A DNA stretch of 64,000 nt, taken from positions 124,001 to 188,000 of IMG/VR virus record IMGVR_UViG_3300009184_000029. One strand, written 5' to 3'. The translations under genes were made by a program, and so were the position numbers. The notes beneath the pieces were generated by a model. That model made no database searches and was not told where the DNA came from. It saw only the letters and a program-made list of their open reading frames with translations. Position 1 is the first letter of the stretch. The number at the start of each line of letters is the position of its first letter. Below are positions 16,220 to 22,723 of this stretch, in pieces.

Positions 16220-16248
16220 ATAATAAATGAAAATTGGATATTTATCAA
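16220..16248 (-). promoter_or_regulatory. Putative sigma70-like promoter of SNF2 gene
   Basis: Minus strand TTGATA(16248-16243)-N17-TATTAT(16225-16220). Confidence 0.4.
16239..16245 (+). promoter_or_regulatory. TATTTAT putative late promoter
   Basis: 4 nt before ATG 16250. Confidence 0.55.
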
Positions 16249-16249
16249 T

Positions 16250-16765
16250 ATGTCAAATAGAAATGTACCAATTACAAGATTAGGAAAATTTTTTAGTGAG
16301 AAAGATTATGATTTAGAAGTCCGAATGGGAGAAGAATGGCTTTTAGGTGATATGAATTTTACATTAGTTTTATACGCAATTGATAGACAAAAAACTAAAA
16401 CTGACGATGTTTACGGTGAAACTCTAAGTGATGGAATTAAATTTAAACCTCCTGTAGAATTTAAAGGACTTGTACAAGTTAATGCACCTGAAAATAAATT
16501 TTTAGGTAATTCAAAAATAAATCAGGTTGAACCAGGAAATGTTAGAATTTCGATTTATTTAAAACATTTGGAAGATTTGGAAATTGATATAAATTTTGGA
16601 GATTACATTGGTTATTATGAAACTGAAAATAAAGTTAGATACTATGTAGTTAATAATGACGGTAGAGTTACTTCAGACAATAAACACACATATGCAGGTT
16701 ATAAACCTTATTACAGAACAATATTGGCGTCACCTGTAACTGAAAATGAATTTAGAGGATTATAA
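16250..16765 (+). CDS. Neck/head-closure protein (T4 gp14-like)
   Basis: DDVYGE motif, size and position between gp13-like and gp15-like genes. Confidence 0.55.
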   Translation: MSNRNVPITRLGKFFSEKDYDLEVRMGEEWLLGDMNFTLVLYAIDRQKTKTDDVYGETLSDGIKFKPPVEFKGLVQVNAPENKFLGNSKINQVEPGNVRISIYLKHLEDLEIDINFGDYIGYYETENKVRYYVVNNDGRVTSDNKHTYAGYKPYYRTILASPVTENEFRGL

Positions 16766-17805
16766 TGTCGTTACCAAAAAAAGTAGTACCTAATTTGTCA
16801 TTGGTTAATCCTAAGACTGGATTATCAAGAAGAGAAGAACTTTTGGAAAGAATCCAAGAGGGGGGTACCTTTTTACCAAAGTCAATTTTACACGAAGATT
16901 TAGATAAAGGTTTTTTAGATTTTGTTAAAAATGATTTAAAATTAGTTGTAAGTGGAAAATTAGTACCTACTGTTGATATAATCATAACAACTCAAAATTG
17001 GGCTCAATTTACACAAACTTGGAATTTTCAAAATATTGATAAGAATGCGGAACCACCATTCATAACCGTAGTTAGAAGTCCTGAGGGTAAGTATGGTAGT
17101 ACACCATCATTACAATATAGAATACCTAATTCAAGACAATTTTTTTACGCTGCGGTACCAACATGGAATGGGGATAGAAAAGGGTTAGATGTATATACCA
17201 TACCACAACCAATTCCTATTGATTTAACTTTTAGTATTAAAATAATTTGCAACAGAATGAGAGAGTTAAACTCATTTAATAAAATTATTTTAGGCAAATT
17301 TTCATCAAGACAATCTTACACAAATGTTAAAGGACATTATATACCAATAATATTAAACAGTATTAGTGACGAATCTGTAAATGATTTGGAAAAGAGAAGA
17401 TATTATTCCCAAAGTTACGATTTTACAATGATGGGATTTTTAATTGATGAGGATGAATTTGAGGTTAAACCTGCGGTTAGTAGAGCATTACAATTGATTG
17501 AAGTTGATAATTCAAAAAAATTAAAAAGACCTAAAAAGTTCCCAAAAAATCCTGATACCTTTGATTTTAATTTTAATTTTAGTTCTTCTGATGATTCTCA
17601 AACACAGACAATAGAATATACATCTACTTTAAAAAATATATCCACAAATAATGTTACCACGTATTCAGTTTATATTAATAGTATTTTCTTTGGTGATAAT
17701 GTTAGTGAAATATGGATAAATCAAGGAGACACTTTAACTATTGAAATTACTAAAACAGTTTTGGGACAAGAGTCTTCTGTTAATTTTTCAGGAACGTTAA
17801 ATTAA
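16765..17805 (+). CDS. Tail terminator/sheath stabiliser (T4 gp15-like)
   Basis: PFITVVR...PIPIDLTFSIKI...MRELNSF pattern; precedes sheath. Confidence 0.55.
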   Translation: MSLPKKVVPNLSLVNPKTGLSRREELLERIQEGGTFLPKSILHEDLDKGFLDFVKNDLKLVVSGKLVPTVDIIITTQNWAQFTQTWNFQNIDKNAEPPFITVVRSPEGKYGSTPSLQYRIPNSRQFFYAAVPTWNGDRKGLDVYTIPQPIPIDLTFSIKIICNRMRELNSFNKIILGKFSSRQSYTNVKGHYIPIILNSISDESVNDLEKRRYYSQSYDFTMMGFLIDEDEFEVKPAVSRALQLIEVDNSKKLKRPKKFPKNPDTFDFNFNFSSSDDSQTQTIEYTSTLKNISTNNVTTYSVYINSIFFGDNVSEIWINQGDTLTIEITKTVLGQESSVNFSGTLN

Positions 17806-17951
17806 CCCTCTCCATATATGTCCGAATCAAGGACACAATTTTTTCTAATTAATTTCTCAACAAACTTATTAATCTTCAAACCTTTTTTTTCACAGTATTT
17901 TTTCAACACTTTATGGGTGTCTTCTGAGATTTTTAAGTTCTTAATGTTCAT
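17802..17951 (-). CDS. Ribbon-helix-helix DNA-binding protein (49 aa, missing from ORF track)
   Basis: Read manually: MNIKNLKISEDTHKVLKKYCEKKGLKINKFVEKLIRKNCVLDSDIYGEG*; strand-helix-G-helix pattern of CopG/Arc-type RHH. Confidence 0.7.
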   Translation of the reverse strand: MNIKNLKISEDTHKVLKKYCEKKGLKINKFVEKLIRKNCVLDSDIYGEG

Positions 17952-17988
17952 ACAATATAAGTATGAATAAAAGATATTTTTTTCATAC
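17947..17988. promoter_or_regulatory. Triple 7-bp repeat operator candidate
   Basis: TTCATAC(17947-53)-N7-GTATGAA(17961-67)-N14-TTCATAC(17982-88), overlapping the RHH start codon and a TACTTAT promoter variant. Confidence 0.55.
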
Positions 17989-18038
17989 CATATTATTTTA
18001 ATTACACTGAAAGTAAAGGTTTTTGTATTTTTTCAAAG

Positions 18039-18045
18039 TATTTAT
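18039..18045 (+). promoter_or_regulatory. TATTTAT putative late promoter (sheath)
   Basis: 30 nt before ATG 18076, followed by A-rich leader. Confidence 0.55.
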
Positions 18046-18075
18046 GCAATAAATAAAAAGAAATAAAACAATAAA

Positions 18076-21000
18076 ATGGCAGAATCTAATAAAGTTTTCG
18101 TATCTCCAGGTGTATATACATCGGAAAGAGACTTGTCGTTTGTAGCTCAAAGTGTGGGGGTTACAACATTAGGTATTGTTGGTGAAACCTTAAAAGGGCC
18201 AGCATTTGAACCTATCTTTATTACAAGTTATGATGAGTTTTCAACCTATTTTGGTGGAACTTCAGCTGAAAAATTTGTAAATACACAAATTCCTAAATAT
18301 GAATCGGCGTACATTGCTAAGTCATACTTACAACAATCAAATCAATTATTTGTAACAAGAGTACTTGGTTTATCAGGGTATGATGCAGGTCCTTCATGGT
18401 CAATTAAAACAATCGCAAATCCTGATGTTACAACTATGGGATTAAACGGTACCGGAACGTCATATTCCGTAGCGTTCTCAGGAAACACTGGTGGAACATA
18501 TAATTATGTTAGTTCATTCCCATCAATAATTGAATCTAATAGAACTGCAACATATACAACATTTGCTGGAGGTTCATCTACAATCCAAGAATCATTAAAT
18601 ACTTTAATTACAACTTTTCTTGGTAATGTATCGACATCAGCGAACACAATTTATTATTTTGGACCTGTTTCAGGCTATAGTGCATTAGCATCATCGTATA
18701 CTGCGGACACTAATGTATTTGGTGTGGATACCGAATCAACTGCAACAATAAATTACGCTTCAGGTACAAATGACTCTTGGTTCTACTCTAACTGGTCCCC
18801 AACAACAGGAAATGCTTACACGGGATATTCTTTCTATAGTGTGATTACAAATACAAGCGGAGCGACTGCAGGAACTTACACAGGTACTGTGTCAGGAAGA
18901 TACTATCAATTTAGTGGTACTGCTTATGTAGACTATAACAATTTAGTAATTGCAACTTTACGTTCAAGAGGTATTTCAACATACAGTAGTACTAATGGAC
19001 CAACTTATCAAGTTTCAGGAGTGAATAACGTATCATTAATTACGACAGGTTCTTATTCAGGTGTAAGTGAAAATCCATATCTAACATTTAAAGTTAGTGG
19101 TTCAACAATTGAAAATACAAACTTTGAATTTGAAACATCTTTAGATGATAATGATACAAGTTATATGAATAAAGTTTTTGGAAGAACTAACTTCGCAAAA
19201 GACAGAACTACAGTTCCATTATTTGTTGAGGAAATTTATCCAACTATGTTGTCATACGGTTACAATCAAGGATATATCAGAGGTATCAGTTCTAATTTAG
19301 TTAGTTTAAACAGTGCTAGAAGTGCGACTTCAACATCAATTGGTAACTATACTGAAAGATATCAAACCCCAGTTACTCCTTATTTAGTTTCTGAATTAAG
19401 AGGTAATAAAGTTTATCAGTTATTTAGATTTGTTTCAATATCTGACGGTAATGATGCTAATACAGAAATTAAAGTATCTGTTGCTAACATGTCATTTAAT
19501 AACTTAACATTTGATGTTATAGTTAGAGATTTCTATGACACAGATGCTAACCCTGTAGTATTAGAGAAATTTACGAACTGTACAATGGACCCTAATGAAA
19601 ATAGTTTTGTTGGTAAGAAAATTGGTTCTTCTGACGGGGAGTACGCAATAAATTCTAAATTTATAATGGTTGAGGTTAATCCTGAAGCACCAACAACGGC
19701 AATTCCTTGTGGTTTTGAAGGTTATAATACAAGACAATACTCAACTTACCCAACAAACTTACCTCCATTCCCAATTTTAAAAACTAAATACGATTTTCCT
19801 GGTGAAATTATCAGTAATCCTCCATTTGGTTCTACTTCAGGGGATGATGCTGTTACATCAGCAGGTGATAATGTAAGAAGAACTTATTTAGGTTTCTCTA
19901 CTAAAGTTGGTGTTGATACTGATTTCTTACAATATAAAGGTAAGATAAATCCTTCAAATCTTTGTACGGCAACTGAATACGACCAATGGGGTGTAAGAAC
20001 TCAAGGTTTCCACATGGATAGTGGAGCAACTGTAATTACTATCGGAACTTCATTTACAACTTCAGGTGACCCAGCGTTTGATTGTGGTGTGGCATCATTC
20101 CAATCAGAACCAACAACTGAATCAAATCCTTACTACAGATTATATTCTCGTAAGTTCACACTTGTATTCCAAGGAGGTTTTGATGGATGGGACATCTATA
20201 GAGAAAATAGAACAAACCAAGATAGATTTGCATTGGGTGGTTCAGGATTTTTGGCAGGAGCTTGTTCTTCTACAAGATACCCAACCGCATCAGGTAAACT
20301 ATTTAAATCAATAACTGTAGGTGACAACTCAACTGATTGGGCTAATACTGACTACTACGCATACTTATTGGGTATTAGTACTTTCTCAAACCCTGAAGCG
20401 GTTAACATTAACTTGTTTGTTACACCTGGCGTTGATTATACTAATAATAGTGGTGTTGTGGAATACGCGATTGATATGGTTGAGAATGACAGAGCGGATT
20501 CATTGTATATTACGACAACTCCTGACTTTAATTTATATCAACCATCAACAGATATCAGTAATTTAATTTACCCACAAGAAGCGGTTGATAACTTGGAAAC
20601 TACAGGATTAGATTCTAACTATACCGCAACTTACTACCCTTGGGTATTAACAAGAGATACTGTAAATAACACTCAAATTTATTTACCAGCAACCGCTGAG
20701 GTAACAAGAAACTTAGCATTAACCGACAACATTGCGTTCCCTTGGTTCGCAGCCGCGGGTTATACAAGAGGTATTGTAAATGCAGTTAAAGCTCGTAAAA
20801 AGTTAACTCAAGAAGATAGAGATACTCTTTATAAAGGAAGAATTAACCCAATCGCTACTTTCAATGATGTTGGAACTGTAATTTGGGGTAACAAAACTTT
20901 ACAAGTAAGAGAATCAGCTTTAGATAGAATTAACGTAAGAAGATTGTTATTACAAGCACGTAAATTGATTTCAGCGGTAGCTGTAAGGTTATTGTTTGAA

Positions 21001-21234
21001 CAAAATGACGATATTGTTAGACAACAATTCTTGGATTCAGTTAACCCAATCTTAGATGCAATCAGAAGAGACAGAGGTCTTTATGATTTCAGAGTTGTTG
21101 TTCAAAACACTCCTGAAGATTTGGATAGAAACCAAATGGTAGGTAAGATTTATATCAAACCAACTAAGGCTCTTGAATTCATAGATATTGAGTTCTTAAT
21201 CACTCCATCAGGAGCGTCTTTTGAAAATATCTAA
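18076..21234 (+). CDS. Contractile tail sheath protein
   Basis: VSPGVYTSERD N-terminus, GETLKGPAFEP, PWFAAAGYTRG, RINPI, WGNKT, DRINVRRL, IKPTKALEFIDIEF. Confidence 0.95.
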   Translation: MAESNKVFVSPGVYTSERDLSFVAQSVGVTTLGIVGETLKGPAFEPIFITSYDEFSTYFGGTSAEKFVNTQIPKYESAYIAKSYLQQSNQLFVTRVLGLSGYDAGPSWSIKTIANPDVTTMGLNGTGTSYSVAFSGNTGGTYNYVSSFPSIIESNRTATYTTFAGGSSTIQESLNTLITTFLGNVSTSANTIYYFGPVSGYSALASSYTADTNVFGVDTESTATINYASGTNDSWFYSNWSPTTGNAYTGYSFYSVITNTSGATAGTYTGTVSGRYYQFSGTAYVDYNNLVIATLRSRGISTYSSTNGPTYQVSGVNNVSLITTGSYSGVSENPYLTFKVSGSTIENTNFEFETSLDDNDTSYMNKVFGRTNFAKDRTTVPLFVEEIYPTMLSYGYNQGYIRGISSNLVSLNSARSATSTSIGNYTERYQTPVTPYLVSELRGNKVYQLFRFVSISDGNDANTEIKVSVANMSFNNLTFDVIVRDFYDTDANPVVLEKFTNCTMDPNENSFVGKKIGSSDGEYAINSKFIMVEVNPEAPTTAIPCGFEGYNTRQYSTYPTNLPPFPILKTKYDFPGEIISNPPFGSTSGDDAVTSAGDNVRRTYLGFSTKVGVDTDFLQYKGKINPSNLCTATEYDQWGVRTQGFHMDSGATVITIGTSFTTSGDPAFDCGVASFQSEPTTESNPYYRLYSRKFTLVFQGGFDGWDIYRENRTNQDRFALGGSGFLAGACSSTRYPTASGKLFKSITVGDNSTDWANTDYYAYLLGISTFSNPEAVNINLFVTPGVDYTNNSGVVEYAIDMVENDRADSLYITTTPDFNLYQPSTDISNLIYPQEAVDNLETTGLDSNYTATYYPWVLTRDTVNNTQIYLPATAEVTRNLALTDNIAFPWFAAAGYTRGIVNAVKARKKLTQEDRDTLYKGRINPIATFNDVGTVIWGNKTLQVRESALDRINVRRLLLQARKLISAVAVRLLFEQNDDIVRQQFLDSVNPILDAIRRDRGLYDFRVVVQNTPEDLDRNQMVGKIYIKPTKALEFIDIEFLITPSGASFENI

Positions 21235-21289: not shown

Positions 21290-21296
21290 TATTTAT
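21290..21296 (+). promoter_or_regulatory. TATTTAT putative late promoter
   Basis: 4 nt before ATG 21301. Confidence 0.55.
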
Positions 21297-22234: not shown

Positions 22235-22723
22235 ATGGCAGATTTGCTAATGAAAATGCCCGTACCTTACGAGCCAAAAAGACAGAATAGATTTATTCTA
22301 AGATTTCCGTCTTCGTTGGGTATTAACGAATGGTTCGTACAAGCAGCGTCAAGACCAACTATAACAATCGGTTCAACTCCGATTCCGTTTTTGAATACTG
22401 AAACATATGTTGCAGGAAGATTTAAGTGGAGTACTATACAAGTTACATTTATTGACCCAATCGGTCCTTCGGCGTCTCAAGCTTTGATGGAATGGGTTAG
22501 ATTACACGCTGAGTCTGTTACAGGTCGTATGGGATACGCCGCAGGTTATAAGAAAAATGTTGATTTAGAAATGTTAGACCCAACAGGAGTTGTGATTGAA
22601 AAGTGGATTTTGGAAGGTTGTTTTATAACAAACGCTGGTTTCGGGTCACTTGGTTACGCTAATGAAGGTTTGGTTAATATTCAGGTAACACTACAACCTG
22701 ATAGATGTATTTTAGTTTACTAA
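22235..22723 (+). CDS. Tail tube protein (T4 gp19-like)
   Basis: YEPKRQNRF, AGRFKWSTIQVTFIDP, EWVRL, GYKKNV, LDPTGVVIEKWILEG; 162 aa downstream of sheath. Confidence 0.9.
   Translation: MADLLMKMPVPYEPKRQNRFILRFPSSLGINEWFVQAASRPTITIGSTPIPFLNTETYVAGRFKWSTIQVTFIDPIGPSASQALMEWVRLHAESVTGRMGYAAGYKKNVDLEMLDPTGVVIEKWILEGCFITNAGFGSLGYANEGLVNIQVTLQPDRCILVY

What the first reader, a model, noticed from the sequence alone, without database searches (positions are those of the whole stretch)
17802..18045. Unannotated RHH regulator with triple operator, divergent from the sheath gene
Seen: 49-aa minus-strand ORF with RHH pattern; three alternating copies of TTCATAC/GTATGAA cover its start codon and the TACTTAT promoter variant, and the last copy is about 50 nt from the sheath promoter. 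Known: RHH dimers bind tandem short inverted repeats cooperatively and often autoregulate. Inference: an autoregulatory switch embedded in the tail operon that may also tune sheath expression; its antisense transcript converges on the gp15-like gene.
Basis: partly seen in the sequence, partly recalled or inferred. Interest (0 to 1): 0.6.

Follow-up and report, generated by a model that had tools for sequence, protein, structure and literature searches.

The report
Small Arc-like repressor beside sheath gene
A real 49-residue ribbon-helix-helix DNA-binding gene sits backwards between the tail-terminator and tail-sheath genes of an uncultivated freshwater jumbo phage and of more than 100 relatives, with repeats at its own promoter that look like a self-repression site: a new sequence family of an ordinary kind of regulator.

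Summary
ORF 17802-17951(-) is a real gene under purifying selection. All 120 related IMG/VR loci carry it in the same place. It models as a ribbon-helix-helix (RHH) homodimer, and Arc, CopG, omega and ParG are among its closest structural matches.

- Relatives keep a different layout: two direct GGYAGAA repeats 11 bp apart, an inverted TCTRCC, then an exact TATTTAT motif pointing at the RHH gene.
- Only heptads 2 and 3 match that conserved pair, here spread apart by exactly 10 bp.
- Heptad 1, over the start codon, is specific to this lineage and may be chance.
- TATTTAT is the genome's dominant gene-start motif. It precedes 72 of 246 ORFs, mostly 4-7 nt before the ATG, which suggests leaderless mRNAs.
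- The RHH gene here has TACTTAT 5 nt from its ATG, flanked by heptads 1 and 2.

Best reading: an Arc/CopG-like autorepressor. Control of the sheath gene is untested and no heptad touches the sheath promoter. The geometry of convergent transcription with the gp15-like gene is confirmed: the two stop codons overlap. This is a new member of a known kind, of moderate to low interest.

The parts
17802..17951 (-). 49-aa ribbon-helix-helix protein gene (stop codon included)
   Evidence: ORF. PHROG Arc-like repressor families, E 8.8e-6 and 5.6e-5. Present in all 120 related loci. Pairwise differences by codon position 0.18/0.11/0.50. AF2 model: extended N-terminus plus two helices. Top fold matches all RHH. 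Homodimer model ipSAE 0.51 against best control 0.00.
17947..17953 (+). Heptad 1 (TTCATAC; GTATGAA on the RHH strand, containing the start codon)
   Evidence: No counterpart in relatives, where the A repeat RGTAGAAAAAA sits here instead. Unchanged in strain variants.
17957..17963 (-). TACTTAT: one-mismatch copy of the genome's TATTTAT gene-start motif, 5 nt before the RHH ATG; candidate promoter of a leaderless mRNA
   Evidence: TATTTAT precedes 72 of 246 ORFs against 11 expected, with a peak 4-7 nt before the ATG. No other ORF of 60 aa or more uses the TACTTAT variant at this distance. A contig from an RNA library ends at 17950 (suggestive only).
17961..17967 (-). Heptad 2 (GTATGAA on +), homologous to the conserved B arm
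17982..17988 (+). Heptad 3 (TTCATAC), homologous to the conserved C arm; the B-C spacer is 16 nt here against 6 nt in relatives
17994..18001 (-). Degenerate remnant (TATTTTAA on +) of the TATAAATA/TATTTATA element, which is the RHH-directed promoter motif in 44 of 50 relatives
18012..18025 (+). AGTAAAG plus TTTTTG: blocks conserved upstream of the sheath promoter motif
   Evidence: Block identity 0.87 and 0.81 against about 0.5 in the spacers; alignment.
18039..18045 (+). TATTTAT promoter-like motif of the sheath gene, 30 nt before its ATG
   Evidence: Invariant in all 50 distinct relatives.
18076..21234 (+). Tail sheath gene (1052 aa)
   Evidence: Pfam Phage_sheath_1 and Phage_sheath_1C above their cut-offs; PHROG 23, E 6.7e-57.
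16765..17805 (+). gp15-like tail terminator gene (346 aa); its stop codon overlaps the RHH stop codon
   Evidence: Foldseek: T4 gp15 in 9mkb_AB at E 3.8e-8, plus 4huh and 4hud (model pLDDT 65.8). Stop-stop overlap in 25 of 30 relatives.
17819..17835 (+). Terminator-like hairpin with a T run inside the RHH ORF, on the plus strand
   Evidence: Not conserved in relatives: fold energy at or near 0 kcal/mol in many, none below -5.5.

Best explanation
The ORF encodes a small Arc/CopG-like RHH dimer that represses its own promoter by binding the heptad repeats around it.

In most relatives the order on the RHH strand is: TATTTAT, 4-5 nt, inverted repeat (GGYAGA, 6 nt, TCTRCC), T run, a third repeat, ATG. 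Bound protein would therefore sit on the transcription start and the leader.

In this phage the region has been remodelled:
- The distal promoter motif has decayed.
- A TACTTAT lies 5 nt before the ATG, implying a leaderless mRNA.
- Heptads 1 and 2 form a palindrome centred on that motif.
- Heptad 3 lies two helical turns upstream of heptad 2.

Shown: the gene is real and conserved, it has the RHH fold, a dimer is predicted, the repeats and motif are conserved, and the repeat cluster is unique in the genome.

Inferred: DNA binding at these repeats, repression, that TATTTAT is a promoter, and a leaderless start.

The gene's fixed head-to-head position against the sheath promoter suggests some coupling to late tail-gene expression, for example by competition between divergent promoters. 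That part is speculation.
For: Gene:
- Present, in the same orientation, in all 120 related loci.
- Third-codon-position divergence 0.50 against 0.18 and 0.11.
- Eighteen invariant residues, including K4, N5 and K7; S9 is at least 90% conserved. N5, K7 and S9 form the predicted DNA-facing side of the strand.

Fold:
- PHROG Arc-like repressor.
- 46 of 47 members weakly hit the CopG-type RepB-RCR_reg family.
- Foldseek and VIA top matches are all RHH, Z 4-5.2 over 42-48 residues.
- Homodimer ipSAE 0.51 against best control 0.00. The mark was reached by 20 of 30 solved homodimers and 1 of 23 single chains. Runs agree in at least 94% of contacts, partner pLDDT at least 75, and the antiparallel strand has its dyad at L6.

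Cis elements:
- Repeat blocks are 0.72-0.85 identical against about 0.5 for spacers.
- An exact TATTTAT points at the RHH gene in 44 of 50 relatives.
- The motif is orientation-specific and has a sharp distance peak genome-wide.
- The central stem position fails to pair in about half of relatives, which argues against an RNA stem.
- The spacer gain here is exactly 10 bp, one helical turn, which keeps both arms on one face of the DNA.
- The A and B repeats are 11 bp apart.
- The palindrome occurs once only in this genome and once in each of two relatives' records of 195 kb and 140 kb.
- Strain variants differ only in spacers.

Precedent: Arc binds a 21-bp operator as a dimer of dimers in adjacent major grooves (PMC12645479). 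CopG, a 45-residue RHH, keeps RNA polymerase off its own promoter (PMC2724298).
Against: - No binding data exist, and no tool here models protein-DNA complexes.
- The DNA-facing strand residues are invariant, yet the heptad core differs between clades (GGYAGA against GTATGA). Either those positions are not read, or specificity lies elsewhere, for instance in the N-terminal arm, which is 5 residues shorter in the GTATGA clade.
- Several relatives (L007, L103, L089, L092, L095) have unlike arms.
- Heptads 1 and 2 are 14 bp apart, which is not in helical phase.
- No other ORF of 60 aa or more in the genome has TACTTAT at 3-8 nt before its ATG.
- A lone autorepressor with no other target has no obvious purpose, so the main target may be unidentified.
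- All curated family scores fall below their cut-offs.
Confidence: 0.6

Rival explanations
1. The conserved inverted repeat acts as RNA rather than as an operator. It would be a hairpin at the 5' end of the RHH mRNA, followed by a U run in relatives. Its role could be to stabilise the mRNA, to attenuate transcription, or to switch pairing between the B' and A' copies and so mask the start codon.
For: The RHH-sense strand folds better than the other strand. Window: -12.1 kcal/mol, z -3.7, against -8.5, z -1.95. L005: -11.2 against -5.6. In relatives the hairpin starts 4-5 nt after TATTTAT, near the inferred transcript start, and is followed by six T's. Seven relatives keep pairing only through G-U on the RHH-sense strand.
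Against: The central stem position is mispaired in 23 of 50 relatives on the RHH-sense strand, which leaves stems of 2+3 bp. The loop grows from 6 to 16 nt in this phage, and the U run is lost. If the mRNA here starts at the ATG, the hairpin is not transcribed at all. No Rfam family matches.
Confidence: 0.15
2. The RHH protein is real, but the window's triple heptad is largely coincidental. The conserved A-tract-rich repeats would then serve the sheath promoter as phased A-tracts or bent upstream DNA, or bind another factor, while the RHH protein acts on unidentified targets in the phage or the host.
For: Perfect 7-N7-7 palindromes are frequent in this AT-rich intergenic DNA. Five of the seven bases of heptad 1 are fixed by the Met-Asn codons. 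The A6/A4 tracts of the A and B repeats are 11 bp apart, upstream of a strong late gene. The strand residues do not co-vary with the heptad core.
Against: The repeats always lie next to the RHH start and promoter motif, not next to the sheath motif, which is 50-55 nt away. A three-copy cluster is rare by simulation (10 of 5000). The palindrome is unique in each genome searched, as expected for a local operator.
Confidence: 0.15
3. The protein works mainly through a partner. Its invariant, disordered C-terminal D-I-Y-G-E tail would bind another protein, in the manner of an antitoxin or an anti-sigma or polymerase-binding factor, and DNA binding would be secondary.
For: D44, Y46, G47 and E48 are invariant and lie in a low-confidence tail. 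Their codons vary synonymously among the relatives' sequences printed. RHH antitoxins use C-terminal tails in this way (structures listed).
Against: There is no co-oriented neighbouring gene, so no toxin-like partner in an operon. No PADLOC hit. The tail is only about 10 residues long.
Confidence: 0.1

Closest known systems
P22 Arc repressor (immI region)
   Same: About 50-residue RHH protein encoded by a phage. Structural match: 1b28 is the top Foldseek hit, and several Arc structures score Z 4-4.5. PHROG 'Arc-like repressor' hits. [quoted passage not shown] From my own knowledge: P22 arc also lies within the late region next to a tail gene, and its operator holds inverted TAGA/TCTA boxes, like the GGTAGA/TCTACC arms in many relatives.
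   Different: No Pfam Arc hit. The DNA-facing residues are N, K, S rather than Q, N, R. The gene stands alone and has no ant-like downstream gene. It has two invariant Cys, one invariant His and a conserved D-I-Y-G-E tail. It carries three repeats, and the heptad here is GTATGAA. The phage is a T4-like jumbo myophage that shows no sign of being temperate.
CopG / RepB-RCR_reg family (pMV158 copy-number repressor)
   Same: A minimal RHH protein of about 45 residues that represses its own promoter by excluding RNA polymerase (PMC2724298). 46 of 47 family members give weak hits to PF10723. Structural matches 2cpg, 1b01 and 1ea4.
   Different: Scores are below the Pfam cut-off (19 bits against 21). 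There is no replication gene downstream. The context is a phage tail module.
Omega repressor (pSM19035)
   Same: An RHH protein that recognises 7-bp heptads in direct and inverted orientations (from my own knowledge). Weak Pfam hit to PF07764, E 0.0038. Structural match 1irq.
   Different: Omega heptads are contiguous and number 7-10. Here there are three copies spaced 11-22 bp apart. The score is far below the cut-off (17.9 against 33.3 bits), and only 1 of 47 members hits the family.
Anti-CRISPR-associated (Aca) autorepressors
   Same: Small phage-encoded autorepressors that bind inverted repeats in their own promoter. RHH-type Aca proteins are discussed in PMC13551039, of which I saw only the search listing.
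   Different: Aca genes lie downstream of an acr gene in one operon. This gene has no co-oriented neighbour.

Membership tests
Ribbon-helix-helix (MetJ/Arc) superfamily | Domain of about 45 residues with the order strand, helix, turn, helix | tested here: met
   AF2 model: extended 1-9, helices 10-23 and 27-39, pLDDT 77.8. All top Foldseek and VIA matches are RHH proteins, Z 4-5.2, 42-48 residues aligned.
Ribbon-helix-helix (MetJ/Arc) superfamily | Obligate homodimer with an intersubunit antiparallel two-stranded sheet | tested here: met
   Prediction only. ipSAE 0.51 against best control 0.00. The mark was reached by 20 of 30 solved homodimers and 1 of 23 single chains. At least 94% of contacts agree between runs, and partner pLDDT is at least 75. 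Contacts 6-6', 4-8' and 5-7'. Because this is a known fold, the pass shows likeness, not proof.
Ribbon-helix-helix (MetJ/Arc) superfamily | Conserved glycine in the turn between the helices and a basic or polar DNA-facing side of the strand | tested here: met
   G24, K26, K4, N5 and K7 are invariant; S9 is at least 90% conserved.
Ribbon-helix-helix (MetJ/Arc) superfamily | Sequence-specific binding to repeated DNA sites | not testable with these tools
   Only the layout and conservation of candidate sites could be examined.
Pfam Arc, Omega_Repress, RepB-RCR_reg, ParG; NCBIfam RepA regulator | Score at or above the curated family cut-off | tested here: not met
   RepB-RCR_reg 19 bits against 21. 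Omega_Repress 17.9 against 33.3. No Arc family hit listed. NCBIfam PRK13702 17.4 against 87. It is therefore a separate sequence family within the superfamily.
Type II antitoxin (RHH class) | Adjacent co-transcribed toxin gene | tested here: not met
   The neighbours are convergent (gp15-like, with overlapping stops) and divergent (sheath). The gene stands alone in all loci. No PADLOC hit.
Autoregulated repressor with operator at its own promoter | Repeats overlapping or directly downstream of the gene's own promoter | tested here: inconclusive
   The layout fits in this phage and in 44 of 50 relatives. The promoter identity of TATTTAT and binding by the protein are both inferred.

The most novel reading that the evidence does not exclude
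The RHH gene and its back-to-back promoter form a conserved timing switch for the tail module of this jumbo-phage clade. While the RHH promoter is active, it competes with or interferes with the sheath promoment 40-80 bp away and with read-through from the tail-terminator gene. As the protein accumulates it shuts its own promoter and releases sheath transcription. The invariant His/Cys/Cys set and the D-I-Y-G-E tail would add a sensing or partner-binding input.
Probability: 0.12. Interest if true: 0.6.

Novelty: new member of a known kind. Interest (0 to 1): 0.35.

Why it matters
Small RHH autorepressors are textbook regulators, so the mechanism itself would not surprise anyone. The value lies in annotation and context. 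The result names a function for a gene that is called without any family in many freshwater metagenomes. It shows that the gene is a fixed part of the tail module of a large uncultivated jumbo-phage clade. It also exposes that clade's promoter-like motif (TATTTAT, mostly 4-7 nt before start codons), which suggests widespread leaderless transcripts. If the protein also times sheath expression, it would be a simple and testable example of late-gene control by divergent promoters in T4-like phages.

Tried and rejected
- Cultured-phage searches with the DNA and with the gp15-like protein found nothing. The RHH protein gave only chance-level hits.
- The PDB profile search put SUMO first. That is a 16-residue local resemblance, which I rejected. 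ParG and Arc appeared at E 0.4-1.4.
- T4-type late promoter for the sheath (TATAAATA on the plus strand): rejected. This orientation shows no distance peak genome-wide, whereas TATTTAT does, and every relative keeps a proximal TATTTAT.
- Intrinsic terminator between the gp15-like and sheath genes: the plus-strand hairpin at 17819-17835 is not conserved.
- Paralogues in the genome: none.
- Further operator-like sites: only imperfect ones, mostly inside genes.
- Sigma-70-type promoter scan: no more hits than in shuffles.
- Metatranscriptome contigs cannot show strand, ends or level. The contig that ends at 17950 is a hint only.
- I did not run the large protein searches, because no claim here rests on an absence of relatives.

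Full report
**Setting.** The window is bases 124001-188000 of a single 222,829-bp virus contig with 30.7% G+C. CheckV rates it 76% complete. The same phage occurs on a 293,981-bp contig in another sample. Its 1052-aa sheath is about 30% identical to sheaths of distant T4-like and jumbo myophages. No cultured phage matches the region's DNA or the gp15-like protein. The DNA recurs in freshwater and lake metagenomes from many studies.

**Observation.**
- The 7-mer is not enriched overall. This is nevertheless the only three-copy cluster among its 55 genomic copies.
- Simulation gives about 0.2% for any comparable triple in such a region (10 of 5000).
- Single perfect 7-N7-7 palindromes are common in this AT-rich intergenic DNA. 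The copy 1/copy 2 palindrome is therefore weak evidence on its own.

**The gene is real.**
- IMG/VR holds 120 related loci. Their gp15-like proteins are 53-62% identical to this one and their RHH proteins 56-76%.
- Every locus has the small ORF in the same place and orientation, between the gp15-like gene and the sheath gene.
- Across 47 distinct proteins the core aligns without gaps.
- Pairwise differences by codon position are 0.18, 0.11 and 0.50.
- Eighteen residues are invariant.
- Gene callers already predict the ORF in JGI assemblies, without any Pfam family.
- The genome has no paralogue.

**The fold.**
- PHROG places the protein with Arc-like repressors (E 8.8e-6 and 5.6e-5).
- Pfam and NCBIfam give only sub-threshold hits, all to RHH families: RepB-RCR_reg in 46 of 47 members, plus Omega, ParG and the RepA regulator.
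- The AF2 model (pLDDT 77.8) has an extended N-terminus, two helices (10-23 and 27-39) and a disordered tail.
- Every top structural match is an RHH protein, including Arc, ParG, CopG, omega, NikR, HicB, MazE and TacA, at Z 4-5.2.
- The homodimer model passes its controls: ipSAE 0.51 against a best control of 0.00. The mark was reached by 20 of 30 solved homodimers and 1 of 23 single chains. Runs agree in at least 94% of contacts, and partner pLDDT is at least 75.
- That model pairs residues 4-8 antiparallel about L6. This puts N5, K7 and S9 on the face that reads DNA in Arc and CopG (inference from the RHH architecture).
- Because the fold is known, the pass shows likeness, not binding.

**Neighbours.**
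- The 346-aa upstream protein matches the T4 gp15 tail terminator by fold (E 3.8e-8; model pLDDT 65.8).
- Its stop codon overlaps the RHH stop codon in this phage and in 25 of 30 relatives.
- No minus-strand terminator-like site follows the RHH gene.
- Convergent, overlapping transcription is therefore built into the layout.

**Promoter-like motif.**
- TATTTAT, oriented with the gene, precedes 72 of 246 ORFs against 11 expected.
- Its distance to the ATG peaks sharply at 4-7 nt, with minor groups at 12-18 and about 30 nt.
- The reverse orientation shows no such peak, and no -35-like element accompanies the motif.
- I read it as a phage promoter element that often yields leaderless mRNAs. This is inference.
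- The sheath gene has the motif 30 nt upstream. There it is invariant in all relatives and preceded by the conserved AGTAAAG and TATTTTG blocks.

**Comparative anatomy of the RHH upstream region**.
- In most relatives, reading the window's plus strand, the order is:
  1. RHH start codon.
  2. A repeat (RGTAGAAAAAA).
  3. B arm (GGYAGA).
  4. A 6-nt spacer.
  5. C arm (TCTRCC).
  6. TATAAATA, which reads TATTTATA on the RHH strand.
- An exact TATTTAT points at the RHH gene in 44 of 50 distinct relatives. It usually lies 34-44 nt from the ATG, and the C arm starts 4-5 nt after it.
- These blocks are 72-91% identical, against about 50% for the spacers.
- The third position of the arms is unpaired in about half of the relatives. 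A and B are 11 bp apart. Both facts fit protein sites on one face of the DNA better than an RNA stem.
- This phage, like L082 and L088, has GTATGA/TCATAC arms instead.
- Here the spacer is 16 nt rather than 6, a gain of exactly one helical turn. The A repeat is gone and the distal motif has decayed to TATTTTAA.
- A TACTTAT now lies 5 nt from the ATG, flanked by heptads 1 and 2.
- Two other relatives, L095 and L079, also carry a proximal exact TATTTAT and a decayed distal one. Promoter turnover between the two positions therefore seems to recur.
- Heptad 1 has no homologue in relatives, and the Met-Asn codons largely dictate its sequence.
- Strain variants of this phage differ only in the spacers.
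- The palindrome is unique in this genome and occurs once in each of two relatives' records of 195 kb and 140 kb.

**RNA alternative.**
- The RHH-sense strand folds better than the opposite strand.
- In relatives the hairpin sits at the inferred 5' end and is followed by a U run.
- The mispaired central position, the enlarged loop here and the probable leaderless start argue against an essential RNA stem.
- No Rfam family matches.

**Expression.**
- Four RNA-library runs hold contigs on this stretch, though several of those contigs are only 90-95% alike.
- One 263-nt contig, with 3 differences, covers 17688-17950. It ends one base from the RHH ATG and runs 114 nt past the RHH stop into the gp15-like gene.
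- This fits a leaderless minus-strand transcript that continues antisense into gp15. Contigs show neither strand nor true ends, and DNA carry-over is possible.

**Verdict.**
- This is a genuine Arc/CopG-like RHH gene with an autorepressor-type layout, fixed in the tail module of a widespread uncultivated phage clade.
- It forms a new sequence family within a well-known kind.
- The 'triple operator' is specific to this lineage in its detail. The conserved core is the pair formed by heptads 2 and 3.
- Regulation of the sheath gene remains a hypothesis.

Noticed in passing
whole genome; in the window e.g. 16239-16245, 18039-18045, 21290-21296: TATTTAT, oriented with the gene, precedes 72 of 246 ORFs and most often ends 4-7 nt before the ATG, with no -35-like partner. 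This suggests a phage-specific promoter and many leaderless mRNAs.
   Followed up: partly
window 17802-17805: The stop codons of the gp15-like gene and the RHH gene overlap on opposite strands (TTAA). The overlap is conserved in 25 of 30 relatives.
   Followed up: yes
RHH protein residues 13, 20, 39 and 44-48 (window 17802-17951, minus strand): Invariant H13, C20 and C39, plus an invariant, disordered D-I-Y-G-E C-terminal tail. In the dimer model residue 39 touches residue 19 of the other chain. This could be a metal or redox site or a partner-binding peptide. Arc and CopG have no such features.
   Followed up: no
window 18012-18025 and 18048-18056; also upstream of the ORF at 22235: AGTAAAG plus T-rich-G blocks lie upstream of the sheath TATTTAT and are conserved in relatives. 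The sheath gene and the gene at 22235 share an ATAAATAAA leader, each with a leader of about 30 nt. This may mark a class of strong late promoters.
   Followed up: partly
genome 117083-117103 (outside the window, 6.9 kb before its start): A perfect palindrome, TTCATAA-N7-TTATGAA, differs from the heptad by one base per arm and has the same 7-nt spacing as heptads 1 and 2. It covers the start codon of a 414-aa ORF. Such palindromes are common here, so it may be chance.
   Followed up: partly
window 18076-21234: The sheath protein is unusually long (1052 aa). The Pfam sheath domains match only residues 764-1040, so about 700 residues are extra domains.
   Followed up: no
window 17819-17835: A plus-strand terminator-like hairpin with a T run lies inside the RHH coding sequence, just after the gp15-like stop. 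It is present in this phage but not conserved in relatives.
   Followed up: yes
L122 (JGI 3300071516 contig, 293,981 bp): The same phage, with an identical RHH protein, occurs on a 294-kb contig. The 222.8-kb record is therefore probably about three quarters of the genome, in line with CheckV's 76%.
   Followed up: no
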